Source: Raja brachyura
Lineage: Eukaryota
DNA length: 64,000 nucleotides
Direction of reading: 5' to 3'
Assembly: GCA_963514005.1 (NCBI GenBank)
Contig: OY740805.1
Coordinates: 36,766,001 to 36,830,000, forward strand
Shown here: positions 11,401 to 31,210 of the stretch, piece by piece
Position numbering within the stretch: the first letter of the stretch is position 1
How the letters are laid out: each line of letters begins with the position of its first letter
Made by a program: the position numbers and the translations under genes
The notes under the pieces: generated by a model
The model's database searches: none
Seen by the model: the letters and a program-made list of their open reading frames with translations, nothing else
Told to the model about the DNA's origin: nothing

Positions 11401-14400
11401 ACCATTATGTATTTCCCCTTTGAAATCAGTCACCCGGCAGTAATACTTTCCTGTATCGTTGATTTTGAGGTAAATGATTTCGATGGATTCATTTAGAATT
11501 CCCGTTGAACAATGTTTCAGAACGCGACCATAATAGTCGCCGCTCGTGTTGGAAACGATACGAGTTTGCACGTCCACGTACCAACTAATGGCCCCAAGTG
11601 AACTGCTTGTCTTGCCACAGTTTAGCCGCACAGTCCCGCCTTCAGTAACTGTGACCTGCGTCGGTGATTGTATGATCGATTCGTCGGATCCAACAGCAGC
11701 TGGAACGAGAAATAAACTTATAGTTTCGGCGCTGGCCTTTCGGCCCACCCAGTCAATGGCATCCATTACACCTATCTACCCAATCCCATTTACTCGCGTT
11801 TCATGGCCTTTCTCTGTCTCAGCGTTTCAAGTGCTTGGCGAGACGCCTCTTAAATGTCGTGAGACAGCCCGTCTTCGATCCTGACCGCGGGAGCTGTCTG
11901 TCTGTGTGGAGTTTGTACGTTCTCCATTACATTGCCAGCATTTCCTCCTGGGAGCTCTTGCTTCCTCTCTCATCCCAAGGACGTGCTTCCTGATCGGTAA
12001 TTAACAGCTGTAAACAACTCCTTGCATCCATCCAGCTAACTGAGACAAAAGGACACTGTATAGCCACCAACTGGTCACAGGAGTGGAAGGCAACCTCATC
12101 TCAATTACAGAGCTGCATTTCTTCACCAGATAAAAGCTATCCAGGGTCTGACCTTCCCAGAGGAGCATGGGTGAAGCATGGGTGAACAACAGACAGCCAA
12201 CCATGCCATCTCTGGGTGACGGCACCACCACCCACCAAATGGAGCTCAGGGCCTGGCAGACATTGACGCCAACAGAAACAACAACCTGGCTGCTCAACAC
12301 CCGGCTTCAGATCTAACTATTCCTTTGGTTTATATTTCATTCGCAAGAAGAAGAACAGCTGTAAATTTCCCCTGGTATATGGAGGAGTCGGAGTGACCGT
12401 AGCGTGAATGTGAATTAAGAGAGAACTGGATTGCTCTTCAACGGAAAAAAAATGGCTTCCTTGCCACTTTCTAGAAATAGGGGATTTCGCCCACAATGGA
12501 CAATAATCGTGTTGGTTTAGTGTGGTTTAGAGACACAGCGCGGATACAGTCCCTTCGGCCTACCGAGTCCGGTGCGACCAACGAACCCCGCAAATTAACG
12601 CTATTCTGCACATATTGGGTACAAGTTACATTTATTCACAGAGGCAAATTAGCCTACAAACCGGCACGTCTTAGGAGTGTGGGAGGAAAACGGAGCTCCC
12701 GGTGAAAACTCACGCAGGGAGAACGTAAACTCTGTACAGACAGAATCCATAGTCAGGATCGAACCCGGGGTCCCTGGCGCTGTAAGGCACCACCTCTACC
12801 GTCCCTCGTGCGTGTTGCCCCTCTCGTAAGCTTTCCTGAACCCTCTGTACTTTCCTTACAGTTCCTCCATCTTCCTCGCCAGGTTATGTTCCCCCATCTT
12901 CCCCGCCAGCTACACCGTCTAGTCTGCATTGGTATCAACAACACATCACTCACCTGGTTCAAATTATACCTCTCCGGCAGCACTCAGTTTGTACAACTTA
13001 AAAATGTCCAATCACAACCCTCCCCAGTCACCAGCTGTGTTCCCCAGGGCTCAGTCCTGGGGCTCCTCCTTTTTATAATTTATTTACACCCCTTCGGTTT
13101 TATTTTCAGGAAATACAACATTCAATTTCACTGCTACGCAGATGACACCCAGCTCTACCTGTCCACCAAACCCACTTCCATGCTTCCTCCCTCTTCCCTG
13201 TTTGACTGCTTAGTGGAAATTAAAACCTCGTTTCCTCACAACTTCCTCAAACTCAACAGTGACAAAACTGAAATTCACCTTGTTGGCTCCAAATCCTCCC
13301 TATCTAACTGTCCCAATTTCTCACTCACCATTAACAATTCCATAGTCCCTCCTTCCCCTCAGGTCAAGAGTCTGGGTGTCATCCTTGTTAGCACACTTTC
13401 CTTTGAAAAACACATCAATAATCTCACTCGGTCTGCTTACTTCCCCCTACGCAGTACCCACCGTCTTCGTCCATCACTCAAACCTAACAGCACTGCTACT
13501 CTCATCCACGCCCTCGTCACCTCCCGTATTGGTTATTGTAACTCTCTCCTCTCTGGTTTACCCCACAAATCCATCCATAAACACCAATTGGTCCAGAACT
13601 CAGCTGACCGGATTATCACCAGAACCGCATCCCCCGAACACATCACTCCCATCCTCAAACAACTGCACTTGCTCCATATCCAATATCGCATTGATTTTAA
13701 GATTCCCCCCCCCCCCCCCCATTCACTTTCAAAGCCCCCCACAATCTCGCTCCTACAAACCTCTCTGAACTCCTTCAGCCTTACACTGCATCCCGAACTC
13801 TCCGATCCTCTTCTTCCTCCTTGCTCTCCACTGCGTCTACCCGCCTGTCCACGATGGGGTTCAGAGTCTTCAGCCGTTCTGCCCCTCACCTCTGGAACTC
13901 TCTCCCACTATCCATCCGTACCATAGAGTCTCTCCCCACCTTTAAAACCTCCCTCAAATGTCACCTATTCAGACGGGACTAGCCCACGTAACTCCACTTT
14001 CTATCAAATTCATGGATATGTTGTTTCTGTCTCATTTTATCTATATATTTGTAATTTGCTTGTTTTAACCGTAAGGTGTTCTTGAGTGATCTGAAAGGCG
14101 CCCATAAATAAAATGCATTAAACGCATTGTGGTCGTATGTTTGTTATTCCGATCTTGTGCTTCAATATTCATTGATTTTGCAGCGTCGAAAGCAGCCATG
14201 AAATCAGCACGGATTATATCAAATTATGCACCGATTCTCTCTTGGTCTTGTGCACATAGTCTCTTGCCAGAGTAGGGGAATCAAGGACCAGAGGACAGAG
14301 GTTCAAGGTGAAGGGGAAATTTTCAATAGGAATCCGAGGGGTATGTTTTCACACAGAGGGCGGTCGGTATATGGAGCAAGCCACCAGAGGAGATTGCTGA

Positions 14401-17400
14401 GGCTGGGCTAGGTTCCCATCGTGTAAGAAGCAGTTAGACAGGTACATGGATATGACAGGTTTCGAGGGACATGGTCCAAGCGCACGCAGGTTGGACTAGG
14501 GTTGCTGGGGCATTGTTGGCCGGTGTGCGCAGGTAGAACCGAATGGTCTGTTTCCACGCTGTATCTCTCTATGCCTCTATGACTGATCTTATAAACATGG
14601 AAAAATAGCAGGTGTAGGCCATTCGGCCCTACGAGCCAGCACCGCCATTCAATATTATCATGGCTCATTATCTAAATCCGTACCCCGTTCCTGCCCTCTC
14701 CCCATATCTCCCGACTCTGCTATATTTAAGAGCTCTATCTTGAAAGCATCCAGTGAATCGTCCTCCACTGCCTTCTATGGCAGATAATTCTGCAGATTCA
14801 CAACTCTCTGGATGAAAGTTTTTTTTCTCATCTCAGTCCTAAATATCCTAAACCCCTTATTCTTCAACTGGGACCCCTGGTTCCTATATTTATAATGGTT
14901 TTCTGTGCCTAAATAATGAATTTCTGTGCATAAATCTGATCTGGCAAAGCTTCGTTGTTGAGACGTGTGGTGGCCGGTGTTCAGAATGGTTTTTAGAACA
15001 ATAAAGGTAAAGTTATGATAACGGAAACTTACGTGTGACTGTGACTTCTGTGCCGTGGCCATTATATATTTCCCCTGTGGAACCAGTCACTCGGCAGTAA
15101 TATTTTCCTGTCTCGTTCATTTTGAGATCAGTGATTTCGATGGATTCTTGTAGAATTACCGGTGAACGATTTTTCAGAACGCGGCCATAATAGTCGCCGC
15201 CCTCATTGGAAACGGCACGAGTTTCCACGTCTTTGTACCAACTAATGGCCCCAATTCTACTGTTTGCCTTGCCAACAGATGTACAGTTTATCCGCACAGT
15301 CCCGCCTTCAGTGACTGTGACATTCTTCGGTGATTGTATGATCGATTCATCGGATCCAACAGCACCTGAAATCAGAAACAATCTTATAGTTCCGGCGCTG
15401 GCCTTTCGGCCCACCCAGTCAATGCCATCCAATACACCTATCTACACAATCCCATTTACACGTGTAGGGATCGTGGCCTTTCTATATCTCAGCGTTTCAG
15501 GTACTTAGCGAGACGCCTATTAAATGTTATGAGACAACCCAGGTTCGATCCTAACCCCGGGTGCTATCTGTCTGTGTGGATTTTGCGCGTTCTCCATTGT
15601 ATTGCCTGCGTTTCACCTGGGCGCTCTTCCTTGCTCTCTCATCCCAATGACGTGCGTCCTGATAGGTAATAAACAGCCCAAAACAACTTCTTGCATCCAT
15701 CCAGCCAACTGAGACAAAAGCACACCGGGTAGCCACCAAGTGCTCACAGGAGTGGAAGGCAACCTCATCTCCATTACACAGCTAAACCTCTTCACCATAA
15801 AAGCTGTTCAGGTTCTGACCTCCCCAGAGGAGCATGGTGCAGATCAACAAACTTGGTACTGGAGTTGGCCGTTTCAACGCCAGAGGCCAGCCTGTGAATG
15901 CGGAGCAGAACAACAGACAGCCAACCATGTCATCTCTGGGCGCCCGCTTTATCACCAAATAGAGCTCAGGCCCTGGCAGACATTGACGTTAACAGAGACA
16001 ACAACCTGGCTGCTCAACACCCGGCTTGAGATCTAACCATTCCTTTGGTTTATGTTTCATTCGCAAATTACCCCTGGTATATGGAGGAGTCGGAGTGACC
16101 GTATCGTGCATGTGAATTAAGAGGGAACTGGATTTCTCTTCGATGGAAAGAAATAAATGTCTTACTGCTTTCTAGAAATAGGGGATTTCGGCCACAATGG
16201 ACAATAATCGTGTTGGTTTAGTGTGCTTTAGAGATACATCGCAGATACCGGTCCTTCGGCCCACCGAGTCAGCTGCGACCAATGATCCCCGCAAAATAAC
16301 GCTATTCTGCACTCACTAGGGCCAATTTACATTTCTCACCGAGGCCAATTAACCTACAAACCAGTACGTCTTTGGAGTGTGGGAGGAAAACGGAGCTCCG
16401 GGTGAAACCCCACGCAGGGAGAACAGAGAGAACCTGTAGTCAGGATCGAACCCTGGGTCCCTGGCGCTGTAAGACTGCAACTCTCCCGCCGCGCCACCGT
16501 GTCGCCCCTCTCTTAAGCTTTCCTAAACCCACGGTACCTTCCTTACAGTTCCTCCATCTTCCCCGCCAAGTTATGGTCTTATGTTTCTTATTTCGATTTT
16601 GTGCATCAACATTCGTGGATGTTGCAGCGTCGAAAGCGACCGTGAAATCGTCACGGATTATATCAAATCATGCACCGATTCTCTATTGATCCTGTACACT
16701 GATGCACATACTCTCTAGCCCAGAGTAGGGGAATCGAGGACCAGAGGACAGAGTTTCAAGGTGAAGGGGAAAATATTTAGTAGGAATCCGATGGGTATTT
16801 TTTTCACACAGAGGGCGCTCGAAGTATGGAGCAAGTCGTCAGAGGAGTTCGTTGGGGTTGGGACTATCCCATCGTTTAAGAAGCAGTTGGACAGGTACAT
16901 GGATAGGACTGGTTTCTATGGGCTGGTGTCGCTGGGACACTGTTGGCCGCTGTGGGCAAGTTGAGCCGAAGAGCCTGTTTCTACGTTGTATCACTTTATG
17001 ACCATGTGACTGATCTTGCACATTCTAATACAAAAATAAACGTAGAACAATGGGTGCAGGAGTAGGCCATTCGCCCCTTCGAGTCAGCACCGCCATTCAA
17101 TATGATCATAGCTGATCATCTAAAATTAGTACCCCGTTCCTGCTTTCCCCCCATATCTCTTGATGCTCTTAATCGAACTCCCTCTTTAAGGCATCGAGTG
17201 AATCGTCCTCCACTGCCTTCTGTGGCAGAGAATTCCACAGATTCACAACTCTCTGGGTGAAAAGGCCTACCCTTTATTTTCAAACTGTGTCCCCTGGTTC
17301 CTACATATATAATAAATGTCTGTGCCTCAATCTGATCTGAACACGTTTCGTTGTTGAGGCGTGTGGTGGCCAGTGTTAAGAATGTTTTTGAGAACGGTAA

Positions 17401-20400
17401 AGATAAAGTTAAGATAACGGAATCTTACGTATGACTGTGACTTCAGTGCCGTGGCCATTATATATTTTCTCTGGGAAAACACTCACTCGGCAGTAATATC
17501 TTCCTGCGTCGGTCATTTTGAGGTCAGTGATTTCGATGGATCCGTTTAGAATCCCCGTTGAAATAATTTCCAAAACGCGACCATGATAGTCGCCACTCGA
17601 GTTGGAAACGGTATGAGTTTGAGTTTCCACGTCTTTGTACCAATTAATGGCTCCAATTGCCTTGCCAACAAATGCACAATTAATCCGCACAGTCCCGCCT
17701 TCAGTAACTGTGATCTGCTCCGGTGATTGTATGATCGATTCATCGGATCCAACAGCACCTGAAATTCAGAAATAACAATATAGTTTCGGCGCTGGGCTTT
17801 CGGCCCATCCAGTCAATGCCATCCAATACCCTATCTACACAATCCCATTTACTCCCGTTAGGATAATGGCCTTCCTATGTCTCAGCATTTCAAGTGCTTG
17901 GTGAGACGAGTCTTAAATGTCATGACACAATGCGGGTTCGATTCTTTACCTCTCTCCCTCTCTCCCTCTCTCCCTCTCTCCCTCCCTCCCTCTCCCCTTT
18001 CTCCCTTTCTCCCTCTCTCTCTACCTCTCTCACTCTCTCCCTCCCTCCCTCTCCACTTTCTCCCTTTCTCCCTCTCTCTCTCCCTCTCTCCCTCTCTCCC
18101 TCTCCCTCCCTTACCATCACCTCCCCTCCACTCTTTCTCCATCTCCCTCTCCCTCCCCCCCCCCACTGTTCTCACTTCCGCACACTCCGTCCCCCACCCC
18201 CTCTCGCTCCCCTCGCNNNNNNNNNNNNNNNNNNNNNNNNNNNNNNNNNNNNNNNNNNNNNNNNNNNNNNNNNNNNNNNNNNNNNNNNNNNNNNNNNNNN
18301 NNNNNNNNNNNNNNNNNNNNNNNNNNNNNNNNNNNNNNNNNNNNNNNNNNNNGAAAGGACCAAGCGACCACACTCCACTGCATCTTTGAACGGATACCTG
18401 TAGGCGGAAACAAACACACAAATAGAGGTCAGGCAGCATCTGTGGAAGACATGGGAAATCCGTCTGCAGAGAGGTCCAGACCCGAAACGTCTGCAGTTCC
18501 CATTTCCCACCTCCAGAGGCGCTCCCTGACCTGCTGAGTTACTCCAGCACTTAAGTCCTTGTGCATTAACTAGCACATGTGGTTCATTGTTTTTACCTCC
18601 AGAGATGCTGCCTGACCCGATTAGTTCCTCCAACACGATGGGGGGTTTTTTATACCGTCTTGTGCAGCATTGTGAAATCCCTTCAGAAGGAACAAGCTAG
18701 ACCGCTTTTCCGGAGGAAACAGGACGTTAGCTGCCTCAAAGGTGACGAAGCCTTTTAACTATTTGCGTGCAAACAATCCACTTAGTGGAAGATCTAAAAG
18801 TAAGATGTTTATTGATCACTCAAATTCAGAATTCGGGATTTCGTTCATTGGCCGAACGGATAATCTGGATCTGCACTCAGTTTAGTGTACCGAGGTACAG
18901 AGATGCTGCCTGTCCCGCTGAGTTAGATGGAGCTCTTAAATATAGTCGAATCAGTGGATATGGGGATATGGCAGGAACGGGGTACTGCTAGGGGATGATC
19001 AGCCATGATCATAGTAAATGGCGGTGCTGGCTCGAAGGGCCGAATGAGGGAGAGAATTCCGCAATCTCACAACTCTACGTGTTTCCTCATCTCCGTTCTA
19101 AATGGCTTACCCCTTAATCTTAAACTACGACCCCTGGTTCTGGACTACCCCAACATCCTGCCTCTAGCGGGTCCAAACCCTTAATAATCTTATATGTTTC
19201 AATAAGATCCCCTCTCATCCCAAATTCCAGTGTATACAAGCCGAACTGCTCCATTCTCTCAGCATATGACAGTCCCGCCATCCCGGGAATTAACCTGCTG
19301 AAGCTACGCTGCACTCCCCCAATAGCAAGAATGTCCTTCCTCAAATTTGGAGACCAAAACTGCACACAAAACTCCATTTGTGGTCTCACTAGGGCCCAGT
19401 ACAACTGCAGAAGGACCTCTTTGTTCCTATACTCAATCGTCTTGTTAACAAGGCCAACATGCCATTCGCTTTCTTCACCGCCTGTTGTACCTGCATGCTT
19501 ACTTTCATGGACTGATGAACAAGGACCCCCCATATCCCGTTGTACTTCTCCTTTTCCCAACTTGACAACATTTAGATAATAATCTGCCTTGATCTTTTGT
19601 TACCAAAGTGGATAACTTCACATTTATCCTCGTTAAACTGCACCTGCCATGCAACATTTTTACCCAGAGAGTTGTGAATTTATGGAATTCCCTGCCACAG
19701 TGGGCAGTCGGCAGTGGAGCAGTGGAGGCCAAATCACTGGATGGATTTAAGAGAGACGATCAGCCATGATCATATTGAATGGCGGTGCTGGTTCGAAGAC
19801 CGAATGGCCTCCTCCTGCACCTATTTCCTCAGTTTCTATTTTCTCTGTTTCTGTAAATTTGCTAATGTGGCGTAATCCTTCATCTAATTCATTAACATAT
19901 ATTGTAAATAGCTGCGGTCCCAGCACCGAGCCTTGGGGTACCCCATTAGTCAGTCCCTGCCATTCTGAAAGGGACCTGTTAATCCCTCCTCTTTGTTTCC
20001 TGTCTGTCAACCACTTCTCTATCCATGTCAGCACTCTACCCCCAATACCACGTGCCCTAATGTTGCCCACTAACCTCCCATGTGGGACCTTATCAAATGC
20101 TTTATGAATGTCCAGGTACACTACATCCACTGGTTCTCCCTTGTCCATATTCCAAGTTACATCTCAAATATTACCAGACGATTTGTCAAGCATGATTTCC
20201 CCTTCGTAAATCCACGCTGACTCGGATCGATCCTGATACTCCTATCCAAATGTGCAGCTATTTCATCTTATATGATTGACTCTAGCATCTTCCCCACCAC
20301 CAAAGAACCGGTCTATTATTCCTCGTTTTCTCTCTTCCGCCTTTCTTAAAGAGAGGGATAACATTAGCTACCCTCCAATCCACAGGAACAGATCGTAAAT

Positions 20401-21015
20401 CTATAGAACATTGTAAAAAATATCTCCAATGCGTTCACGATTTCTAGAGCCACTTCCGTAAGTACTCCGGGATGAAGACCATCAGGCCCTGGGGATATAT
20501 CAGACTTCAGTCCCATCAGTCTACCCAACACAATTTCTCCAAGGTTCCAACTTCGGTCTTAAGTAATGTTTTCATCTTCACATACATAAAGAAGCCTTTA
20601 CTATCCACCTTTATATTCTTGGCTAGCTTACCTTCGTACCTCATATTTTCTCCCCGTATTGCCTTTTTAGTTATCATCTGTTGCCCTTTAAACATTACCC
20701 AAACCTGTGGCTTCCAGCTCATCTTTTCTACGTTGTACGTCTTCTCTTTTATTTTTATAGTTCCTAGTTCACTTGGGACAAACTTGCTAGCCAATTCGCC
20801 TTAAACCAGGATACTGGAGCACACAAGTAACCCCAAGAGGTTCATTGGGAGATGTGCAAACTCCATTCAGACAGCACTCAGGATCTGGATCAAACGTGGA
20901 TAATTGGATTCAGTATCCTTAGTAACAGGGCCGATCATCTTATCAACATAGGGGTACAGTGGACTTCAAGCACGAGGAAGCAAGCTAAAGATATTCTGAT
21001 ATTTTCACATGCCAT
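2016..21015 (-). CDS. Gene A (spliced, 7 exons, ~578 aa): NKp30/NCR3-like inhibitory receptor with 3 VJ-type Ig domains, neutral TM and 5 ITIMs
   Basis: Exons 20958-21015, 17429-17758, 15033-15365, 11304-11699, 8369-8506, 5493-5524, 2016-2465 have GT/AG boundaries, phases 1-1-1-1-1-0, and sum to 1737 nt (579 codons with stop) without internal stops. Leader exon is the least certain part. Confidence 0.8.
2109..2333 (-). repeat. Three 75-bp coding tandem repeats, each carrying one ITIM
   Basis: ggatgt(c/t)tcaaggcggagta recurs at 2131, 2206 and 2281; unit SAAGG(Y/R)ED(S/P)VVYSAL(K/R)HPAPxxNxA. Confidence 0.95.
2556..2855. mobile_element. MITE-like DNA transposon remnant with internal inverted repeat
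   Basis: 24-bp perfect inverted repeat at 2558-2581 and 2738-2761; ends in AAGTGGGGCAGGCCCTTAA, resembling a Harbinger-type terminus (inference). Confidence 0.45.
2875..5420 (+). mobile_element. CR1-type LINE ORF2 (reverse transcriptase), degenerate
   Basis: [28 protein letters not shown], [17 protein letters not shown] and PQGSVL split by stops and frameshifts. Confidence 0.93.
5493..5524 (-). CDS. Gene A short cytoplasmic exon, (G)[10 protein letters not shown]
   Basis: atattacag|GTAAAGGA...GCTAAG|gtatgt; 32 nt, phase 1 in and phase 0 out, exactly bridging the TM exon and the ITIM exon. Confidence 0.75.
6032..6185. other. Undetermined bases (N run); others at 18217-18352, 41127-41318 and 41411-41552
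   Basis: n characters in the sequence. Confidence 0.99.
6335..6600 (+). mobile_element. Rex1/Babar-like LINE 3' fragment
   Basis: Degenerate RLYFLRRL...YRCTI-type C-terminal ORF2 sequence. Confidence 0.45.
7660..8135 (-). mobile_element. Penelope-like element fragment (GIY-YIG C-terminus and LTR)
   Basis: [27 protein letters not shown] and [19 protein letters not shown]. Confidence 0.8.
8369..8506 (-). CDS. Gene A transmembrane exon (uncharged TM)
   Basis: ttttatttcccaacag|GG... and CCAG|gtaata; encodes [45 protein letters not shown], a hydrophobic span followed by a basic stop-transfer. Confidence 0.88.
9055..9622 (-). mobile_element. CR1-type LINE 3' fragment
   Basis: [27 protein letters not shown]. 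Confidence 0.88.
10445..10472 (-). ncRNA. Minimal hammerhead-ribozyme-like motif (Penelope LTR)
   Basis: CUGAAGA-A-GGGUC(UC)GACCC-GAAACGUC. Confidence 0.5.
11119..11146 (+). ncRNA. Minimal hammerhead-ribozyme-like motif (Penelope LTR)
   Basis: CTGAAGAAGGGTCTCGACCCGAAACGTC. Confidence 0.5.
11304..11699 (-). CDS. Gene A membrane-proximal VJ-type Ig domain plus repetitive stalk (NKp30-like)
   Basis: cgttccag|CT and T|gtaagt, phase 1-1, 396 nt. Has C..W..DTGKYYC and the J-like GHGTEVTV. Confidence 0.92.
12900..14118 (+). mobile_element. L2-type LINE 3' fragment (RT)
   Basis: [36 protein letters not shown]; frameshift at the poly-C near 13710; aataaa at the 3' end. Confidence 0.9.
15033..15365 (-). 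CDS. Gene A middle VJ-type Ig domain (NKp30-like)
   Basis: atttcag|GT and C|gtaagt, 333 nt. INCTSV...IGAISWYKD...ETGKYYCRV...[10 protein letters not shown]. Confidence 0.92.
17429..17758 (-). CDS. Gene A membrane-distal VJ-type Ig domain (NKp30-like)
   Basis: atttcag|GT and C|gtaaga, 330 nt. [30 protein letters not shown] and GHGTEVTV resemble human NKp30 AIGSVTWFRD, VRN..EFRGRL, CRVEV and GNGTRLVV (recalled, not aligned). Confidence 0.92.
17950..18216 (+). repeat. CT-rich low-complexity tract (also 21835-22040 and 45035-45240)
   Basis: (CTCC/CT)n polypyrimidine runs. Confidence 0.9.
18920..20762 (-). mobile_element. CR1-type LINE fragments, nested (paralog 42120-43960)
   Basis: [42 protein letters not shown]. 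Confidence 0.88.
20958..21015 (-). CDS. Gene A putative leader (signal peptide) exon
   Basis: [19 protein letters not shown](C) joins in phase 1 to AVG|SDESIIQ, giving a plausible signal peptide. The donor GTACCC is weak. An ETS-IRF motif lies just upstream. Confidence 0.55.
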
Positions 21016-21047
21016 TAAAAAAAATCATCAAGATTGCTCACAGCTAG

Positions 21048-21057
21048 TTTCACTTCC
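21048..21057 (-). promoter_or_regulatory. ETS-IRF composite element (EICE-like), gene A promoter
   Basis: GGAAGTGAAA matches GGAAnnGAAA, about 33 bp upstream of the putative ATG. Confidence 0.5.
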
Positions 21058-21514
21058 TCACAAGCAGGCAACTAAACTTCCTTAATTTTGTAATTACATT
21101 CTAAGAAACGACGTGTGTGCTTAGTAACGACGTGTGGAAATTTATTTTGAGAATACCGCATCTGCAGCCTTGTTAACGCCAAGTTGTTTAGTTCCTCTTT
21201 ATTTACCGCCCTTCTGCATTCACAGGTTCACATATGTGTCCACCTGCTAGATATCTCGCGAAGTTGGGGGTTTAAAGTGCACACTCTCCACTCTCCAACT
21301 AGAACACACGGATTGCGTGGGGATTCAACATGGCGGATACGCAGGCAGGTGGGACTGGTGCGGATGAGACATGTGAGAGTGTGGACAGGTTGGACCGAAG
21401 GGCCTGATTCCATTCTGTATGCGTCCATGACTCTGTCAAAATCAAAAGGCAAAGACATAACAAGCTCGATTAACTCGGCGGGACAGACAGTATCTCTGGA
21501 GAGAAGGAATGGGT

Positions 21515-21542
21515 GACGTTTCGGGTCGAGACCCTTCTTCAG
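21515..21542 (-). ncRNA. Minimal hammerhead-ribozyme-like motif (Penelope LTR)
   Basis: Same 28-mer on the minus strand. Confidence 0.5.
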
Positions 21543-22100
21543 ACTGAGAGTCTGGGGAAAGGTAAACGTGAGATGTGCAAAAAAAAGTACAATGATAACG
21601 GAAACAGGCAATATACAATAGACAATACGTACAGGAGTAGGCCATTCGGCCTTTCGAGCCAGCACCGCCATTCAATGTGATCATCCACAATCTGTACCCT
21701 GTTCCTGCCTTCTCCCCATATCTCCAGACTTCGCTATTTTAAGAGTTTTTTTCTCGGTCCAGTGTCTTTAATTCCACGCGATCCTCGATACACAGACAAG
21801 ATAAGTTAAACATTAAAAAAAACGTGTATCAGTCTCTTCCGCTCCCTCCCTCTCTCTCTCCCCCACCCCCCCCCCCCCCTCAGCCCCCCCTCTCTCCACC
21901 TCTCTCCAGCCACCTATCTCCCCGTCTCCTCCCTCTCCCTTCTCTCTCCCCTCTTTCTCCCCCCCTCTCCCCTTCTCCGTCTCCACCTCTCCCCACTACC
22001 TTCCTCCTCTCCCTACTCCCCCACCACCCCCCCTTCCATCCATGAACCCCCTCCAGGGTAACACATTCACCAACACTCAGTGTTCTATCGTATTATACTG

Positions 22101-22300
22101 GCGGTCACGGTGGCGCAGCGGCAGAGTTGCTGCCTTACACCGCTTACAGCCGCCAGTGTCCAGGTTCAATCCCGATCACGGATGCTGTCTGTACGGAGCT
22201 TGTGTAGTGTGTCGTGTTAATGTGCGGCGACCGCTGGTCGGTGCGGATTCGGTGAACCGAAGGGTCTGTTTTCGCACTGTATTTCTAAACTAAACTAAAC
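22101..22300 (+). mobile_element. tRNA-derived SINE (paralog 45301-45500; other copies near 1725-1972, 12505-12820, 16205-16505, 39375-39690)
   Basis: A box TGGCGCAGCGG, B box GGTTCAATCC, (CTAAA)n tail. Confidence 0.8.
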
Positions 22301-23399
22301 TGGTTAAACCCACCAACATCCCACTAACATAAACACACAATATTCCCAAAGACCTATCGGGGGTAACTCGATATTCCGGCACTTACCCCCAGTAAATTGT
22401 TGCGCGATGGCAGCGTTGGATCTGAAGCTGCTCTTGGACTTCTTACAGGGAGCGAAGCACTGAGCTGCAAAAGAGAGAAGTCTTGTCAACATCCAGTCTT
22501 ATCTGCATCCGGCAGAATTCTAGCTTCCGTAAACCATGTTGGGAACGAGGGCACGTTCTGTATGGTTGCCTTATGGATTAATAACAGCAAAAAAAACATA
22601 CTTACATTTTGGAAAAACGCATCCACGCCAACGTTTAAAATGTGGATTTCAAATATGTCGGAAACGTTACATCTTGAAGAAATTAGATTCCTCCTATTAG
22701 GCAAAGTAGACCAATTCTTAAAGATTTGGTCTCCTTTTATCGACTTGTTACAAGCATATGGTGCAACATAACCTTAGAAATTAAATGGTCCAGAAGCGGG
22801 TGACGGGTGGGTAAAGATATTAAAGACGTATATCTTTCCTAATTTCTTTTCTGTTTTTAGTCTTTTTAAAAAAATATATTTAGCTTCTTATGCCTTCTTT
22901 CTGTCTCTCTGGCTATTCGTTTCTACTCTCTTGTCTATCTCTTTTTCGGGCTCTTCCTATTATATCACGAATTATCACCATCACCATTGCCTGCGACACT
23001 CTCTATTTTCTTCTTTCTATCACTGTTCTTTTATCATTAAATTAAAAAGAAGAAGTTGTACAAGAACTGTAATATGTCTGTATGCATCCGGTACTTAGGT
23101 ACCACATTACTGTATTTACTTCTAACAAAAATATATATATTTAAAAAAGAAGAAAAAAAGACTTGGGTGTCTCCAGCTGAAACTCACCAGGAAGGCTGGC
23201 TCTGTCCTGGGGCGGAGTTGGATTCATGGGAGGTGGACTTGGAGGGCAGGCAACAGACTGGTTCCACCAACATGCAGCACAGAACGCCACAGGAGATCCT
23301 TCTTCCCTGTGGCTACCAAACTGTACAAGGGTAGACTGACTGATGGTGCCTCACCCGCTGAGTTACTTCAGCATTTTGTGTCTACTTTTCTTTTTTTTT

Positions 23400-24475
23400 G
23401 TTACTAATATTTTTATTAGAAGTAAACATTTCACAATGATAAAACAAATTTGCAAATACCAACTTAAATCAGTAATTGTACAAATATCACATTGATTATT
23501 ATTATCTTCTGTTTTTTAGAAATAGAGAGAAAAAGAAAAAAGAATACATTTTAAATCAACAAATGTTGTGATTAAATAATAATTTTGATTATATAAAAAA
23601 AGTAAAGAGAAAGAAAAAAGAGAAAAAAAATAAAAACACCAGTTAATATATATCTATTCAATATATATATATTTCCCCTTTAAAAACAATAAAAGGTATT
23701 ATATATATATTTAAAAGAGAAGCAACAAAATACATTGTAAATAAAAATATTACAAATGATAATATCATCCTATTGTAGAGACATGTATACAAATCCCAGT
23801 TTGAAAATGAATTATTTTCATCAAATCCTGTCGAGTACCCATTGAGTTGTAATGCCAAGAACAGCTATCCCTTCAAATATTGTATATATGGAGACCATAT
23901 TTGTTCAAAGATTTCACATTTGTCCATTGGGACAAATCTGATTCTTTCCAAATACAATGTCTCCAACATCTCTGCTGTCCACATTTTAATTATGGGGGTT
24001 AATGTTCCCTTCCAAAATTTCAATATTATTTTTTTCCCTATTATCAAACAGTAATCAAAGAAATTTCTTTGATTTACCGTTAATACCAATTTTGAGTCCG
24101 GAATTCCTAACATTATTAACTTTGGATCAGGATCCAGTTTAACTCTAAGAACTTCAGAAATAACTCTAAAGATTTCTGTCCAATAATACCTAAGTTTTGA
24201 ACACGTTACAAAACTATGTATTAAATTAGCCTCTAAATTCTGACATTTATCACAAATAGGAGAAACGTTAGGAAAAATTCTATTTAATTTAGTTTTTGAA
24301 TAATGTAATCTATATAATACTTTAAATTGTATCAATGTATGCCTAGCATTTAACGAACAACGATGTATACGTTGTAAACTTTCTTCCCAAGTTTCTTTTG
24401 TTATAGATAATCCTATTTCATTTTCCCAAGCTTGGCGATATATTTCTGTTGTTGGATTCTCCCTATCCAAAATAA
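23400..24475 (-). mobile_element. Tx1/L1-clade LINE 3' fragment with A-rich UTR (paralog 46600-47675; related + strand piece 22560-23140)
   Basis: QFKVLYRLHYSKTKLNRIFPNVSPICDKC...HSF..C..L..YW zinc-finger C-terminus. Confidence 0.85.
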
Positions 24476-25309
24476 TATTATATATATGTTTTGTGTCTAC
24501 TTTTCTATTAACATTTATGTTGCACTTGTAATGAGTTGAAACGCAAATTTCAGTTCAGTTCTGGGCCGGTTTCTTCCCATCTGTTATCAGGTAACTGAAC
24601 CATATGACCAGAACCATAGATTAGTGCTGAACTACTATCTACCTCATTGGTGACCCTGGGACTATCATTGATCGGACTTCATCGGATCGCACTTTGCACT
24701 AAACGTTATTCCCTTATCATGTGTGTATACACTGTAAATAGCTCGATTGTAATCATGTTTTGTTGTTCTGCTGACTGGTTAGCACGCAACAAAAGCTTTT
24801 CACTCTACCTCGGTACACGTGACAATAAACTAAACTGATAACTGCAATCCTGCTGCTTGGTCCTTGGTCCTGTATTTCTTGGAACGTGGGAACGTAAGGA
24901 ACGTGAGAGCACTGTGTTGAAATTGCAGAACCTTTGTACTGTTGTTAGTAGCAAAACACCCGAAATGTTTCACAATGCAGGAAATGTCCTCAGGTTAAGT
25001 ATTTCTGCTATTTCAGTGTTTCCACAACGCGATTGAGACATGACTCGACTGATGCTTGAGAACCACTTGAAACCTATTATGTTAATTTATATGCTGGAAA
25101 AAAACCGGTCTTGTGGAAAAACAGTCGGGGACAAAGAAAAATTGTTCCCATGTAACCTCCCTGATAATTGTTTCTTAGGATCTCAGGCTGTCGATTTCGC
25201 TACAAGTACGCATTTATATTTACAATCAATCTCTTGCGCAATAATACTCGATTCAGCAATGTAACATTAGTACATTAGCTTGCAGTAATACAGTTAAATA
25301 TATATTTTA

Positions 25310-27735
25310 GCTATGAAAAACAAATATTGTTTTGGAAAAGAATCTGGAGGTTAAGCGTTAAGATCAGAAACATTCGAACACTCACTGAGGAAGACATAAA
25401 CAATCTCCCAGAAGTACTGGTGGACAGAGGATCTACGGGGGTAGAGGAACTGAAATACATTTCCATTAGGCGAGAAATAGTATTGGGTAGCCAAATGGGA
25501 TGAAGGATGATAAATCTCCTGCGCCCGATGGCCTGCATCCCAGGGTCCTCAGTGAGGAGGCTCTAGAAATAATGGACACATTGGTGATAATTGTCCAATG
25601 TTCAATAGATTCAGGATCCGTTCCTGTGGATTGAAAGATAGCTAACGTTATCCCACGTTTGAAGAAAGGAGCGAGAGAGACAACGGGGATTACAGACCAG
25701 TTAGTCCGATTCGGTGTTGGGAAAGATGCTGGAGTCAATTACTAAAGAGGTAGTAATGGGGCGTTCGGATAGCAGTAAAACGATTAGTCCAAGTCAACAT
25801 GGATTTATGAAACGGAAATCATGGTTGACTAATCTTCTGGAATGTTTTGAGGATGTGACAAGTAAAATGGATGAAGGAGTGCCAGTGGACGTAGTGTATC
25901 TAGGCTTTCAGAAAGCCTTTGATAAGGTACCGCACGGGAGACCGCACAGCCATCCACCATTACTCTCTGGCATCTCCCATTCAGCCACTGTCGAATCCAT
26001 CTTGCTACCTCGCCATTAACACCCAATGATTGAACCTTCTTAACGAACCTTCCATGGGGAACCTTGTCAAAGGCCTTACTGATATCCATATAGACAACAT
26101 CCACTGCTTTAACCTCATCAATTTCCCTAGTAACCTCTTTTAAAAAAAGGTTTGTCAAACATGACCTTCCAGGCACAAATCCATGTTCTGTTCCTGATCA
26201 GACCCTGTTTATCCAAATGCTTATATATATTATCTCTAAATATCCTTTCCATTAATTTGCCCACCACTGACGTCAAACTAACAGGTCTATAATTGCTTGG
26301 TGTATTCGTTGAACCCTTTTGAAACAATGGAACAACATGCGCAGTACGCCAATCCTCCGGGACTATTCCCGTTTCTAGTGACATTTGAAATATTTCTGTC
26401 ATGGCCCCTGCTATTTCTGCACTAACTTCCCTCAATGTCCGAGGGAATATCCTGCCAGGACCCGGAGACTTATCCACTTTTATATTTTTCAAAAGTGTCA
26501 GTACTTCCTCCTCTTTGAATCTCATAGTTTCCATAGCTACTCTACTTTTTTCCCCTTACCTCACAGAGTTCAATATCCTTCTCTTTGGTGAATACAGAAT
26601 AAACTAAATTGTTCAATATCTCCCCCATCTCTTTTGGCTCTGCAGATAGCTGTCCATTCTGGGTAATGGAATGTTGGCCTTCATAACTTGAGGATTTCAG
26701 TACAGGGGTAAAGAGGTTCTTCTGCAGTTGTGTAGGGTTCTGGTGAGACCACATCTGGAATATTGTGTACAATTTGGGTCTCCTAATTTGAGGAAGGACA
26801 TCCTTGTGATTGAGGCAGTGAGCGTTGGTTCACGAGATTGATCCCTGTGATGCCGGGACTGTCATATGAGGAAAGATTGAAAAGACTAGGCTTGTATTCA
26901 CTGGAGTTTAGAAGGATGAGAGGATATCTTATAGAAACATAAAAAATTATATAAGGACTATGCAAGCTAGATGCAGGAAAAATGTTCCCAATGTTGGGTG
27001 AGACCAGAACCAGGGGTCACAGTCTTAGAATAAAGGGGAGGTCATTTAAGACTGAGCTGAGAAAAAACTTTTTTACCCAGAGTGTTGCGTATTTATGGAA
27101 TTCCTTGCCACAGACGGCGGTGGAGGCCAAATCACTGGATGGATTTAAGAGAGTTTGATAGAGCTCTAGGGGGCTAATGGAGTGAAGGGATATGGGGAGA
27201 ATGCAGGCACGGGTTATTGATAGCGGACGATCAACCATGGTCATATGGAATGGCGGTGCTGGCTCGAAGAGCGGAATTTAATATATTCATTGTATATATA
27301 AATTAATATATTTTGTAAATAGCTGCGGTCCCAGCATGGAGCCTTGGGGTACCCCATTAGTCACTGCCTGCCATTCTGAAAGGGACCCGTTAATTCCTAC
27401 TCTTTGCTCCCTGTCTGCCAACCACTTCTCTATCCAAGTCAGCACTATACCCCCAATACCACGTGCCCTAATTTTGCTCACTAACCTCCCATGTGGGAAC
27501 TTATCAAATGCTTTATGAATGTTCAGATACACTACATCCACTGGCTCTCCCTTGTCCATTTTCCAAGTTTCATCCTAAAAAATCCCAAAGGATTAGTCAA
27601 GCATGAATTCCCCTTCGTGAATCCGTGCTGACTCTGATTGATCCTGTTACTCCTATCCAAATATGCCGCTATTTCATCATATGATTTACTCCAGCATCGT
27701 TGCTATGTTGTACTTCTTCTCTTTTATTTTTATAG
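25310..27735. mobile_element. Mosaic of CR1-type fragments in both orientations (paralog 48510-50960)
   Basis: Several RT motifs (KSPGP, QHGF, AFDKVPH) on both strands. Confidence 0.85.
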
Positions 27736-27932
27736 TTCCTAGTTCACTTGGGACACAATTACTAGCCAATTAGCTTTAAACCAGGATACTGAAGCACACA
27801 AGTAACCCCAAGAGGTTCATTGGGAGATGTGCAAACTCTTTTCAGACAGCACTCAGGGGCTGGATCAAACTTGGATAATTGGAACCAGGATCCCTAGTAT
27901 CAGGGCTGATCATCATGTCAACATAGGGACAC

Positions 27933-28035
27933 AGTGGACTTCAAGCAAGAGGTAGTAAGTTAAAGATATTCTGAACTTTTCTCATGACATTTAAAAATAA
28001 AATCATCAAGATTGCTCACAGCTATTTTCACTTCC
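27933..28035 (-). pseudogene. Duplicated, disabled leader exon with retained EICE motif
   Basis: Homologous to 20958-21057 but reads ATG TCA TGA (codon 3 TGT->TGA). Part of an internal duplication of about 19.9-21.5 kb at 27.3-28.5 kb. Confidence 0.55.
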
Positions 28036-29899
28036 TCACAAGCAGGCAACTAAACTTACTTAATTTTGTGATTACATTGGATGTGTGTGGTTAGTAACGA
28101 CGTGTGGAAATGTATGTTGAGCACAACGCAGCTGCAGCCTGGTTGACGCCAAGTGGTTTAGTTGCTCTGGATTTACCGCCCTTCTGCATTCACAGAGTTC
28201 ACAAATGTGTCCACCTGCTTGATATCTCGCGGAGTAGGGGGTTTAAAGTGCATACTCTCCACTGTCCAACTAGAACACACGGATTGCGGGGGGCTTCAAC
28301 ATGACGGATACGCAGGCATGTGGGACTGGTGTGGATGGGGCATGTTGGTCGATGTGGGGAAAGTTGGGCCGAAGGACCTGATCCCATTCCGTATGCGTCC
28401 ATGACTCTGTTAAAAGCAAACAGGGGTAACCACGGCAAAGACACAAAAAGCGGGAGTAACTCAGCGGGACGGGCAGCATCTCTGGAGAGAAGGAATGGGT
28501 AACGTTTCGGGTCCGGTTCGAGACTCTTCTTCAGACTGATGTCAGGGGAGGGGGCGGGACAAATGTAGAAGGTAGGAGTGAGAGAGGATGTTGCTGAACT
28601 GTCGTCGGAGAGAGGAGGTGAACTTCCTCAAAGTTGACACACCTGGCGGAGTTTACGCAGCGGAGTGGACAAAATGTGCAAGAAAGAACTGCACATGCTG
28701 GTTTAATTCGAAGGTAGACACAAAACGCTGGAGTCACTCAACGGGACAGGCAGCAACTCTGGAGAGAGGAATGGGCGATGTTTCGGGTCGAGACCCTTCT
28801 TCAGACTGATGTCAGAGGACGGGGCGTGGCAAAGATAGAATGCAGGGTATGGGATATATTGGTCGGTACGGACAAGTTGGGCCGAAGGGCCTATTTCCAC
28901 ACCGTATCACTCTATGTCTCTTTGACTCCAACCCGCTTTCAGTTTCTCTAACTAAAATAGACAATATCTTAGGAAAGCAATGGAACACTCTCGATCTGAA
29001 CAGATGCTGGGAATCGCTGCATCACCTGGTACACGTATCAATCCCTGGACAAGAAACTGTCTCCTTTGACGAGTACAGTACCAATGACGGCCTTTTGCAG
29101 AAATGGGGACAGTTGATAAATTGCTGTAAGCTGTTTTAGTGTGTTTTTAGACGTTGGAAGCTTCTGAGATACTGCGCGGAAACAGTCCCTTCGGCCCACA
29201 GAGTCCGTTCCGACCAACGATCACCCCATCCGTTTGTTCTATCCGACAAGTAGATACAAAATGCTGGAGAAACTCATCGGGTGAGACAGCATCTCTGGCG
29301 AGAAGGAATAGGCGACGTCTCGACCCGAATCGTCGCCCATTCGTTCTCTCCACAGATTCTGCCTCACCCGCTGAGTTATTCCAGCATTTTGTGTCTACCA
29401 TCGATTTTACAGGTATTTGCAGTTCTTTATTAAACATTTCAATCCTCCACGCTCGGGGCAGTTTACAATTTATACCAAGGCCAATTAACCTACAAACCTG
29501 TAGGTATTTGGAGTGTTGGAGCAAACCGGAGATCTCGGAGCAATCCCACGCAGGTCACGGGGAAAACGTACAAAATTCGTACAGACAGTATACGTGGTCG
29601 GGATGGAACCTGATAAGGCAGCAACTCTACCGCTTCTCCACCGTGCCGCCCTAATGACACTTTATTCGCACATGTACATTGGTGCAGTGAAACGCTTTGT
29701 TCTGCATACAATCCTGTAATATATATATTTTCCAGAGTTGCTGCTTGTCCTTTGGGATGTTGTGATCTTTTACTTGTATATATTCATTGGGTTTAATTTT
29801 AAACAATATTTCAGATAACACATTGCGGAGATTGGAAATGTTTTATCTGACATCGGGTTGCAGTGAACGACAAGTTGGTCGTGTAGAGCTACAGGATTC

Positions 29900-30965: not shown

Positions 30966-31193
30966 TTTATGAGACACATACGTGTATATACAGATAGATT
31001 GGACATCCATGTAACAGAAGAGACTTATTAAAGTTTCGGATACAGCAGGGCTTTTAATAACTTTCCAGCGCACATCACTCAGCGTTAAATTGTTGCATTA
31101 TTTAAAGAACATGAACAAGACTCTATTAACAAAGCGTTCATTATTGGTCTATTATTACAGCCTGTAATAATCACTGTCAAACCACACCATTAT

Positions 31194-31210
31194 GGCGCCA
31201 TCTAGTGGTC
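31194..31210. promoter_or_regulatory. CTCF-like binding motif between gene B 3' end and gene A upstream region
   Basis: GGCGCCATCTAGTGGTC, reverse complement containing CCACTAGATGGCGC, a close match to the vertebrate CTCF core. Confidence 0.55.

What the first reader, a model, noticed from the sequence alone, without database searches (positions are those of the whole stretch)
16616..29446. Homogenised promoter, leader and distal V domain between the activating and inhibitory genes
Block 16616-29446 is near-identical to 39801-52674. The distal V domains are protein-identical with two synonymous changes. The proximal V domains differ at 9 residues, and the flanks (11.2-16.6 vs 35.3-39.8 kb; 30.9-33.8 vs 53.1-55.6 kb) are clearly more diverged. 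The right breakpoint is sharp (aatcct|ccac vs aatcct|gttt). Inference: a recent gene conversion or unequal crossover keeps the ligand-binding domain and expression matched, as in Siglec-5/14 and Siglec-11/16.
Basis: partly seen in the sequence, partly recalled or inferred. Interest (0 to 1): 0.78.

Follow-up and report, generated by a model that had tools for sequence, protein, structure and literature searches.

The report
Gene conversion between paired skate immune receptors
Two neighbouring immune-receptor genes of a skate-like fish, one built to inhibit and one to activate, share an almost identical 12.8 kb front end (outer binding domain, start of the signal peptide and 11 kb upstream), most likely copied from one gene to the other as in known mammalian paired receptors.

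Summary
Block 16616-29446 matches 39801-52674 at 99.47% (66 substitutions in 12,493 aligned bases, 8 indels). The left flank is 93.3% identical and the right flank 85.9%.

Both genes run on the minus strand. Gene A has a leader, three V-set exons, a TM exon and a tail with five ITIM-like motifs. Gene B has a leader, two V-set exons and a TM exon with a lysine, a 15-residue tail and a stop. The distal V exons encode identical proteins with 2 synonymous differences. The proximal ones differ at 9 residues.

What I add:
- The block has two layers, 0.14% divergence up to about 24.1 kb and 1.06% beyond.
- The right edge sits where both copies run into unrelated repeat DNA.
- The assembly gap cuts the leader exon in both copies, so only 31 and 29 coding bases of the leader can be compared.
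- No promoter is mapped.

Nested interlocus gene conversion is the best reading (about 0.68). I could not exclude an assembly artefact, because only contigs were available, not raw reads. This is a known mechanism in an unnamed skate receptor family. First-stage notes report similar unchecked tracts on other pieces of this genome.

The parts
16616..29446 (-). Copy A of the homogenised block. It runs from 813 bp downstream of the V1 exon (inside the V1-V2 intron) to 11,063 bp upstream of the ATG.
   Evidence: 66 substitutions in 12,493 aligned bases against copy B. Edges.
39801..52674 (-). Copy B of the homogenised block.
16616..24130 (-). Inner, younger layer of the block. It holds V1, intron 1, the leader and 5.7 kb upstream.
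   Evidence: 10 substitutions in 7,185 bases. Best change point at 24126, and 0 of 500 permutations reached its chi-square.
24131..29446 (-). Outer, older layer of the block. It is far-upstream DNA rich in LINE fragments.
   Evidence: 56 substitutions in 5,308 bases. RVT_1 matches in ORFs 25832-26197 and 27290-27574.
18353..18383 (-). Gene A leader exon, readable part. ATG at 18383-18381, then the frame runs into the assembly gap.
   Evidence: The first 10 residues match 8 of 10 with the N-terminus of relative P0001.
18217..18352 (.). Assembly gap that removes the end of the leader exon and its donor in copy A. Not filled.
17429..17758 (-). Gene A distal V-set exon (V1), phase 1-1, with a J-like G-x-G-T-x-V-T-V end.
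   Evidence: Pfam V-set E = 6.4e-14. Splice sites. An RNA-like contig ends at the exon edge (record 32).
15033..15365 (-). Gene A middle V-set exon (V2). It lies in an A-only cassette of about 0.95 kb, outside the block.
   Evidence: Pfam V-set E = 3.9e-12.. RNA-like contig 15033-15239 with 0 differences, ending at the exon edge (record 31). No counterpart in B.
11304..11699 (-). Gene A proximal V-set exon plus stalk (V3).
   Evidence: Pfam V-set E = 8.5e-9..
8369..8506 (-). Gene A transmembrane exon, with no charged residue in the membrane span.
   Evidence: 54% identity to P0002 over 56 residues.
2019..2465 (-). Gene A cytoplasmic exon with five ITIM-like motifs: one IIYADL, three VVYSAL and one VVYATV.
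   Evidence: BLASTP to P0002 E = 4e-24.
41553..41581 (-). Gene B leader exon, readable part. ATG at 41581-41579, then the frame runs into the gap 41411-41552.
40621..40950 (-). Gene B distal V-set exon (V1). The protein is identical to A V1, with 2 synonymous differences.
35340..35735 (-). Gene B proximal V-set exon plus stalk. An alternative donor would end the exon at 35376.
   Evidence: Pfam V-set E = 6.3e-9..
33946..34103 (-). Gene B last exon: phase-1 acceptor, membrane span with a lysine, 15-residue tail, stop at 33946-33948.
   Evidence: 73% identity over 49 residues to the C-terminal part of P0001.
11251..16615 (-). Left flank of unit A, homologous to 35287-39800. Older duplication, 93.3% identical.
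30855..33815 (-). Right flank of unit A, homologous to 53082-55841. 85.9% identical.

Best explanation
Two tandem genes on the minus strand form an inhibitory/activating receptor pair of an unnamed V-set family with a J-like strand, known so far only from skates. The genes arose by an old tandem duplication of a unit of about 21-22 kb.

Later, non-allelic homologous recombination without exchange of flanks (interlocus gene conversion, or equivalently a double crossover) overwrote 12.8 kb of one gene with its neighbour's sequence. The tract runs from the intron behind the distal V exon, through that exon, intron 1 and the leader, to 11 kb upstream. A second, more recent event renewed the 7.5 kb nearest the gene.

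The second event ends at the same left edge. My inference is that heteroduplex cannot extend into the 93%-identical flank. The right edge lies where the two copies carry unrelated repeat insertions.

Consequence, inferred and not shown: both receptors present the same membrane-distal V domain and share the same 5' region. The same ligand would therefore meet an ITIM-bearing receptor, expected to recruit SH2 phosphatases, and a lysine-TM receptor, expected to pair with an ITAM adaptor of the DAP12 or FcR-gamma type.
For: - Identity steps from 93.3% to 99.47% at 16616 and back at 29446 (Fisher p = 6e-110).
- About 97% of the tract is non-coding. RVT_1 was found in 3 of the 10 block ORFs I scanned. 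Constraint therefore cannot explain the identity.
- An internal step lies at about 24126: 10 in 7,185 against 56 in 5,308 (Fisher p = 1.4e-12; 0 of 500 permutations reached the observed chi-square).
- The tract has two edges, so one unequal crossover does not suffice.
- The copies differ by 8 indels, including one of 34 bp, so they were assembled separately.
- The stretch 18353-41126 has no N. It links A's 5' half to B's TM exon, V2 and V1 in one contig.
- Gene models: V-set in 4 of 4 V ORFs scanned, phase 1-1 exons, a lysine-TM exon with a stop and an ITIM tail.
- A related skate, Rhinoraja longicauda, has neighbouring loci. LOC144602683 has a leader, one V and the same lysine-TM. LOC144602684 has a TM and an ITIM tail.
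- Contigs of run X1 bridge A's left edge with 0 differences (16455-16741). Contigs break at the variant site 17439. V1 contigs carry 1, 1 and 2 other letters, the numbers expected of B-type sequence.
Against: - No raw reads were available. All 4 runs laid were Logan contigs, so copy number, depth and long-range phasing are untested.
- X1 may be the very sample the assembly came from. The other sample of the same organism (X19) gave no contig on the unique part of the block (depth 0 at 17448-18216).
- The table did not list which letters differ at 17439 and 17649. 'B-type' therefore rests on counts only.
- I saw no B-side junction contig.
- The assembly has estimated gaps at the same spot in both copies, a sign of a hard region.
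- The 0.14-1% difference between copies is within a range that allelic variation could give.
- No orthologous locus could be fetched (look-up of encoding contigs closed). The test by species tree, block grouping by species and flanks by gene, was not done.
- Donor and recipient are unknown.
Confidence: 0.68

Rival explanations
1. Assembly artefact. The real copy B (or A) carries a diverged block, and the assembler, gap-closer or polisher wrote the other copy's sequence, or its second allele, into it. The near-identity would then be false or overstated.
For: - Estimated gaps lie at the homologous spot in both copies.
- Differences of 0.14-1% are compatible with allelic variation.
- The inner layer could reflect consensus polishing with mixed reads.
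- Only contigs could be laid, possibly from the source sample. No B-side junction was seen.
Against: - Both junctions of each copy lie inside gap-free sequence.
- Switching to the wrong copy and back would need two chimeric joins at exactly homologous points 12.8 kb apart.
- The copies differ by 8 indels and 66 substitutions, so neither is a pasted duplicate.
- The A-side left junction is present in a 287-base contig with 0 differences.
- The contigs listed in table 8 on the unique part of the block (17239-17943) carry 0-2 other letters. However, only the longest pieces are listed and 250 rows of differences were not shown.
Confidence: 0.13
2. Unequal crossovers in a larger array rather than conversion. 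A hybrid gene (B's 3' half joined to A's 5' half) arose by misaligned exchange, and a later exchange or deletion produced the right edge.
For: - The units lie in tandem, only 1.5 kb apart. The cluster holds more such genes according to unchecked first-stage notes.
- The outcome would look the same as conversion.
- The right edge coincides with insertion and deletion differences.
Against: - It needs at least two exchanges plus loss of a unit, where one conversion explains each layer.
- The inner layer shares the left edge of the outer one. That fits repeated copying within an already identical tract better than repeated array resizing.
Confidence: 0.12
3. One gene, not two. The V exons of unit B are upstream exons of a single long multi-V inhibitory gene, and the block is an internal exon-cassette duplication.
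For: All V exons are phase 1-1 and could be spliced in series. I have no transcript that shows B's V2 joined to the lysine-TM exon.
Against: - Each unit has its own ATG and leader start.
- A phase-1 TM exon with an in-frame stop follows B's V2.
- That exon is 73% identical to the C-terminal part of a separately annotated one-V gene in a related skate, whose neighbour is the ITIM gene.
Confidence: 0.04

Closest known systems
Siglec-11 / Siglec-16 (primates)
   Same: Adjacent inhibitory and activating genes. A tract covering the upstream region plus the V-set exon is 99.3% identical in humans, against 93.1% for the rest of the similar region. Conversions are repeated and fragmented, and a simple-sequence tract lies at the edge of the duplicated region (passages of PMC5701461). 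Here the figures are 99.47% against 93.3%, there are two layers, and a TTAGT-type satellite lies at the unit edge.
   Different: The human tract is about 2 kb within a similar region of about 3 kb. Here the tract is 12.8 kb, of which 11 kb lies upstream of the ATG. The domains here are V-set with a J-like strand and there are no C2-set exons. Sialic-acid binding is not implied. The host is a cartilaginous fish.
Siglec-5 / Siglec-14, CEACAM1/3 and Xenopus CEACAMs, CD300A/C, KIR2DS4/3DL2, LILRB3/A6
   Same: Paired receptors whose ligand-binding ends are kept alike by gene conversion. I saw only titles and the starts of abstracts, in the listing (PMC4042635, PMC2832619, PMC5112662, PMC12447643, PMC2768862, PMC3894450).
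   Different: All are tetrapod families with other domain types. I did not read these papers beyond the listing.
Novel immune-type receptors (NITR) of ray-finned fish
   Same: From recall, not from a call: V domains with a J-like motif, inhibitory forms with ITIMs, activating forms with a charged TM residue, and clustered, fast-evolving genes.
   Different: A 2019 review says NITRs are studied in ray-finned fishes and leaves open whether cartilaginous fish have them (passages of PMC6795676). Here every ectodomain exon is a V with a J-like end, rather than V plus I. I ran no sequence test against NITRs.
NKp30 (NCR3)
   Same: A single V-type domain with a J-like end and a charged TM residue. V1 aligns over its whole length to solved NKp30 chains at E = 6e-9.
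   Different: Residues 8-91 of V1 score better against one pIgR domain (E = 3.5e-13). TCR alpha V domains (E = 1e-8) and SIRP alpha (E = 2e-7) also align over nearly the whole domain. The match therefore shows the fold class, not orthology. NKp30 has one V and no ITIM partner.
Rhinoraja longicauda LOC144602683 / LOC144602684 (uncharacterised)
   Same: These are the only relatives found by two word searches. LOC144602683 has a leader, V, stalk and the same lysine-TM (72% identity to B's proximal V, 73% in the TM part). LOC144602684 has a TM and an ITIM tail (E = 4e-24). Consecutive locus numbers on one 41-Mb contig suggest the two are neighbours.
   Different: The activating form there has one V, not two. 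Whether its 5' end matches that of its neighbour is unknown, because the locus could not be fetched. The search sees only proteins of 0.55-1.75 times the query length.

Membership tests
Paired activating/inhibitory receptors under concerted evolution (Siglec-5/14 type of system) | Adjacent genes with opposite signalling modules: an ITIM tail against a charged TM residue with a short tail | tested here: met
   Gene A has five ITIM-like motifs and its TM has no charged residue. Gene B has a lysine in the membrane span, a 15-residue tail and a stop. Both are backed by relatives.
Paired activating/inhibitory receptors under concerted evolution (Siglec-5/14 type of system) | N-terminal binding domain near-identical while the rest of the genes is clearly more diverged, with abrupt edges that include non-coding DNA | tested here: met
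   V1 has 0 amino-acid differences and the proximal V has 9. The block is 99.47% identical against 93.3% and 85.9% in the flanks.
Paired activating/inhibitory receptors under concerted evolution (Siglec-5/14 type of system) | Across species, the converted part groups by species and the unconverted part groups by gene | not testable with these tools
There is only a hint from proteins: all five V domains of the window share residues near the J-like strand that both R. longicauda proteins lack, and the reverse. Lineage-specific duplication would give the same pattern.
Paired activating/inhibitory receptors under concerted evolution (Siglec-5/14 type of system) | Both genes are expressed | tested here: inconclusive
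   Run X2 behaves like RNA. Depth is 87-331 on V exons and 0 on 17844-18216, and contigs end at exon edges. One contig on A-only V2 has 0 differences. One contig on V1 has 2 other letters, the number expected for B. The run's kind is not on record and the letters were not listed.
Paired activating/inhibitory receptors under concerted evolution (Siglec-5/14 type of system) | Same ligand bound by both; opposite signals delivered | not testable with these tools
   Needs binding and signalling assays.
Siglec | N-terminal V-set of the sialic-acid-binding type followed by C2-set domains | tested here: not met
   Pfam Ig_CD22 matches only partially and below its cut-off (22.6 and 26.1 bits against 27). 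No C2-set domain reaches its cut-off. All ectodomain exons found are V-set.
NKp30 / NCR3 | Orthology of the V domain; a single V; arginine in the TM | tested here: inconclusive
   NKp30 chains match at E = 6e-9 over the whole V. TCR alpha V domains match at about E = 1e-8, SIRP alpha at about 2e-7, and pIgR scores better on part of the domain. Here there are two or three V domains and a lysine. That NKp30 has one V and a TM arginine is recalled, not from a call.
NITR | V domain with J-like motif plus an I-type second domain; family-specific sequence similarity | not tested
   The J-like G-x-G-T-x-V-T-V motif is present in 5 of 5 V exons. I made no comparison with NITR sequences. The definition is recalled.

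The most novel reading that the evidence does not exclude
Skates carry their own, so far unnamed family of V-type paired receptors with a J-like strand. It would be a cartilaginous-fish counterpart of NITR, KIR and Siglec pairs. In it the activating and inhibitory partners are kept matched by recurrent, nested conversion tracts of more than 10 kb. These tracts renew themselves within a fixed 'conversion domain', bounded on one side by diverged intron and on the other by transposon heterology. If the many similar, unchecked first-stage notes on other pieces of this genome hold, this would be the general mode of evolution of its immune-receptor clusters. It would also place the decoy/counter-receptor logic at the base of jawed vertebrates.
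Probability: 0.3. Interest if true: 0.6.

Novelty: new member of a known kind. Interest (0 to 1): 0.42.

Why it matters
Gene conversion that keeps an activating receptor matched to its inhibitory partner is a textbook feature of mammalian immune-receptor pairs. It is read as a trace of conflict with pathogens that exploit the inhibitory partner.

A clean case in a skate, in a family that databases list only as uncharacterised, would show the same arrangement and the same genetic mechanism in cartilaginous fish. It offers a defined pair for binding and signalling tests: identical distal V, different proximal V, and opposite tails.

The tract is unusually long. It consists mostly of transposon-derived upstream DNA and has two layers. 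That makes it a useful natural example of how earlier homogenisation and insertion heterologies set the limits of later conversion.

It does not open a new kind of biology.

Tried and rejected
- Selection as the cause of identity: rejected. About 97% of the block is non-coding and holds LINE fragments.
- A single unequal crossover: rejected, because the tract has two edges.
- A paralogous TM exon for gene B: I looked for DNA similarity to A's TM region in 29.5-35.3 kb and found none. A hydrophobicity scan then found a different, lysine-bearing TM exon.
- Siglec membership: rejected.
- Read laying at 88% likeness: it was meant to lay B-flank contigs across A's left edge. Repeat copies swamped it (114,289 records for X1) and only 40 of 290 difference rows were shown. 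The B-type letters left of 16616 could therefore be neither seen nor excluded. Depth values are summed over repeats and I do not use them.
- dN/dS: V1 has 0 non-synonymous and 2 synonymous differences. The proximal V gives dN/dS of about 0.70 (9 and 4 differences). Both are too few for a test.
- Literature: searches found no paper on paired receptors with conversion in sharks or skates. This covers only the held library and these terms.
- Supplements: I asked for none. Additional file 1 (Figure S1) of PMC5701461, which shows the boundaries, may bear on the comparison.
- Spliced models: I searched exons and open frames one by one.


Full report
**What is in the sequence**

The window has four runs of N: 6032-6185, 18217-18352, 41127-41318 and 41411-41552. 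A BLAST of the first half against the second shows two colinear tandem units, A at 11251-33815 and B at 35287-55841. Identity depends strongly on position.
- The central parts are 99.519% identical (18355-27299 vs 41553-50499) and 98.423% identical (27293-29446 vs 50527-52674).
- The left parts are 91.7-92.0% identical.
- The right parts are 91.0%, 85.2% and 81.8% identical.

A MAFFT alignment of the units read in 500-column windows shows a jump from 93.4% (16086-16571) to 99.2% and more, and a collapse after 29446. The list of differences puts the last densely spaced mismatch at 16615/39800 and the next at 17439. Counts:

| Segment | Substitutions / aligned bases | Identity | JC distance |
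|---|---|---|---|
| Block 16616-29446 | 66 / 12,493 (plus 8 indels) | 99.47% | 0.0053 |
| Left flank 11251-16615 | 292 / 4,385 | 93.3% | 0.070 |
| Right flank 30855-33815 | 344 / 2,438 | 85.9% | 0.156 |

Fisher's test for left flank against block gives p = 6e-110.

**The gap**

On the minus strand an ATG at 18383 opens a frame that reads ten residues and one more base, then meets the N run 18217-18352. Below the gap come a GA-rich simple repeat, ordinary intron sequence and the V1 acceptor at 17760-17759. Copy B is the same, with its ATG at 41581, 29 readable coding bases, the gap 41411-41552 and a second gap 41127-41318 in the simple repeat.

The ten residues match 8 of 10 with the N-terminus of the relative P0001, whose leader has 14 residues before the split codon that opens its V domain. 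So about a dozen coding bases and the splice donor of the leader exon are unread in both copies.
- The V1 exon lies about 460 bases from the gap and is untouched.
- Whether the sequence on the two sides of the gap is continuous cannot be shown. No contig lay on 18042-18216 in any of the 4 runs.

**The genes**

All coding parts are on the minus strand. Stop-to-stop frames with Ig hallmarks were scanned against Pfam, and 4 of 4 V frames match V-set at E = 6e-14 to 8e-9.

| Exon | Gene A | Gene B |
|---|---|---|
| Leader | readable 18353-18383 | readable 41553-41581 |
| V1 (distal) | 17429-17758 | 40621-40950 |
| V2 | 15033-15365 (A-only cassette) | 35340-35735, proximal, plus stalk |
| V3 | 11304-11699, proximal, plus stalk | none |
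| TM | 8369-8506 | 33946-34103, lysine in the span, 15-residue tail, stop |
| Cytoplasmic | 2019-2465 | none |

- All V exons are phase 1-1 and end in a J-like G-x-G-T-x-V-T-V strand.
- Gene A's V2 lies in a cassette of about 0.95 kb that unit B lacks.
- Gene A's cytoplasmic exon carries one IIYADL, three VVYSAL and one VVYATV.
- Gene B's V2 has an alternative donor that would end the exon at 35376.
- Gene B's last exon has a phase-1 acceptor.

I searched the exons one by one and built no joined model.

**Relatives**

Two word searches found only two proteins, both from the skate Rhinoraja longicauda and both named uncharacterised (taxonomy).
- LOC144602683 (P0001, 196 aa) has a leader, one V, a stalk and a lysine-TM. 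It is 73% identical to B's last exon over 49 residues.
- LOC144602684 (P0002) has the end of a V, a TM and an ITIM tail. It matches A's tail at E = 4e-24 and A's TM exon at 54% identity over 56 residues.
- Consecutive locus numbers on one 41-Mb contig suggest that an activating and an inhibitory gene are neighbours there too.

These searches see only proteins of 0.55-1.75 times the query length, so longer relatives may exist. Against solved structures, V1 matches NKp30 over its whole length at E = 6e-9 and TCR alpha V domains at E = 1e-8 over nearly the whole domain, and matches one pIgR domain better on part of its length. That shows the fold class, not orthology. The window is thus most likely from a skate or a close relative.

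**What the block holds**

In gene terms the block starts 813 bases behind V1's donor, inside the V1-V2 intron. It runs through V1, intron 1 and the leader, and ends 11,063 bases upstream of the ATG. Of its 12.8 kb, only the 330-base V1 exon and the short leader are coding.

Of 10 open frames I scanned in the block, 3 match reverse transcriptase. Many stretches resemble other repeat copies in the window at 74-89%. Purifying selection cannot hold such DNA at 99.5%, so a copying event is required.

The two V1 exons encode the same 109 residues and differ at 17439 and 17649, both synonymous. The proximal V domains differ at 9 of 111 codons, with 4 synonymous differences and dN/dS of about 0.70. 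Neither pair allows a test of selection.

**Two layers**

Differences are not spread evenly in the block.
- There are 10 in 7,185 bases from 16616 to 24130 (0.14%).
- There are 56 in 5,308 bases from 24131 to 29446 (1.06%).
- Fisher's test gives p = 1.4e-12. The best single change point is at 24126, and 0 of 500 permutations reached its chi-square.
- The change point lies inside an open frame of repeat origin (23868-24554), not at a repeat edge.

I read this as an older copy that reached 29446 and a younger one that renewed the part next to the gene. It is inference that the younger event stops at the same left edge because exchange cannot extend into 93%-identical DNA.

The left flank is itself uneven, from 87.6% to 98.5% in 200-base windows, with a patch of 96-98.5% at 13165-13764. 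That may be the trace of still older patches.

**The edges**

At the right edge both copies share the same last bases and then continue into unrelated sequence.
- In A this is a high-copy repeat (similar to 1-91, 417-529 and 7506-7625 of the window) followed by a LINE fragment.
- In B it is a TA microsatellite and another repeat-like stretch.
- Colinear homology returns at 30855/53082 at 91-93%.

The tract thus ends at a heterology. The left edge has no indel and no motif that I could see.

**Reads**

All 21 runs offered were kept as contigs. I laid X1, X2 and X10 (one sample) and X19 (same organism, another sample) on 12300-18216 at 88% likeness, hoping to see contigs of both copies across the left edge. 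Repeats swamped the tables. What can still be read:
- An X1 contig of 287 bases lies on 16455-16741 with 0 differences. It bridges A's left edge and carries A's letters at the 11 sites that distinguish A from B there.
- X1 contigs end at 17438 and start at 17440, on either side of the variant site 17439.
- V1 contigs of X1, X10 and X2 have 1, 1 and 2 other letters. These are the numbers expected if they are B-type over the sites they cover, but the letters themselves were not listed.
- X2 looks like RNA. Depth is 87-331 on the V exons and 0 on 17844-18216. One contig stops at the exon edge 15033 with 31 letters going on elsewhere. Another stops at 17427 with 14 letters going on.
- X19 gave nothing on the unique part of the block.

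X1 may be the sample behind the assembly, so this is weak and not independent support. It does not test copy number.

**Explanation and rivals**

Interlocus gene conversion in two nested rounds explains both edges, the layers and the non-coding content (confidence 0.68).
- An assembly artefact remains possible (0.13). Against it: all four junctions lie in gap-free sequence, 18353-41126 is one uninterrupted stretch that links A's front to B's back, and the copies differ by 8 indels.
- Repeated unequal crossovers in a larger array would give the same picture with more steps (0.12).
- One long multi-V gene is unlikely given B's own ATG and its TM exon with a stop (0.04).

**Comparison with what is known**

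The pattern is that of Siglec-11/16, where the upstream region plus the V-set exon is 99.3% identical and the rest 93.1%. Conversions there are repeated and fragmented, and a simple repeat marks the edge of the duplicated region (passages of PMC5701461).

The listing names further cases: Siglec-5/14, CEACAM in mammals and Xenopus, CD300A/C, KIR and LILR. I saw only titles and the starts of abstracts for these.

The differences here are the tract length (12.8 kb against about 2 kb), the domain type and the host. A 2019 review says NITRs are studied in ray-finned fishes and leaves open whether cartilaginous fish have them (passages of PMC6795676). A 2025 paper reports gene conversion among the C domains of shark UrIg2, a different gene (passages of PMC12227049). 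My five literature searches found no report of converted receptor pairs in sharks or skates.

First-stage notes of this scan list similar tracts on other pieces of the same genome, none of them checked.

**Verdict**

This is a new member of a known kind, of moderate interest.

Noticed in passing
55603-64000, and about 33800-33840: A satellite of period 10 (TTAGT-type, about 838 copies, 77% matches) starts next to unit B's far end and runs off the window. Three copies of the same five-base motif lie at the end of unit A, just behind B's last exon. The old tandem duplication may have been bounded by this simple repeat.
   Followed up: partly
14958-15903: Unit A has a cassette of about 0.95 kb that unit B lacks. 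It carries a whole extra V exon (15033-15365), so the inhibitory gene has three V domains and the activating gene two. An RNA-like contig covers the exon with 0 differences.
   Followed up: partly
2106-2333: A direct repeat of about 75 bases inside the cytoplasmic exon (2106-2258 vs 2181-2333, 88.9%) produces the three VVYSAL motifs. The related skate protein P0002 has only one at that place.
   Followed up: partly
11304-11390 and 35340-35415: Both proximal V exons run on into a stalk made of repeats of the J-strand end. In B two good donors (after 35376 and after 35340) could give two stalk lengths.
   Followed up: no
33946-33948: B's reading frame stops at a TAA where the relative P0001 reads on for eight more residues. 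The tail is short either way.
   Followed up: no
2466-8368, including gap 6032-6185: The relative P0002 has about eleven residues between the end of its TM part and the start of its ITIM part. I did not locate a matching exon in the window. Phase 1 out of the TM exon and the frame of the tail exon also call for a small exon in between. An assembly gap lies in this intron.
   Followed up: no
13165-13764: A patch of 96-98.5% identity lies inside the 88-95% left flank. It is in a shared intronic LINE with an open RT frame of 406 aa (12706-13923, + strand). It may be an older conversion patch or slower decay.
   Followed up: no
20713-21558 and 27690-28549: Two stretches inside the block resemble each other at about 85-86%, in both copies. 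This is either an old internal duplication or two copies of one repeat family.
   Followed up: no
run X2: A small run of the same sample as the best DNA holder behaves like RNA and covers the V exons at high depth. It could settle splicing and the A/B transcript ratio if raw reads were laid.
   Followed up: no
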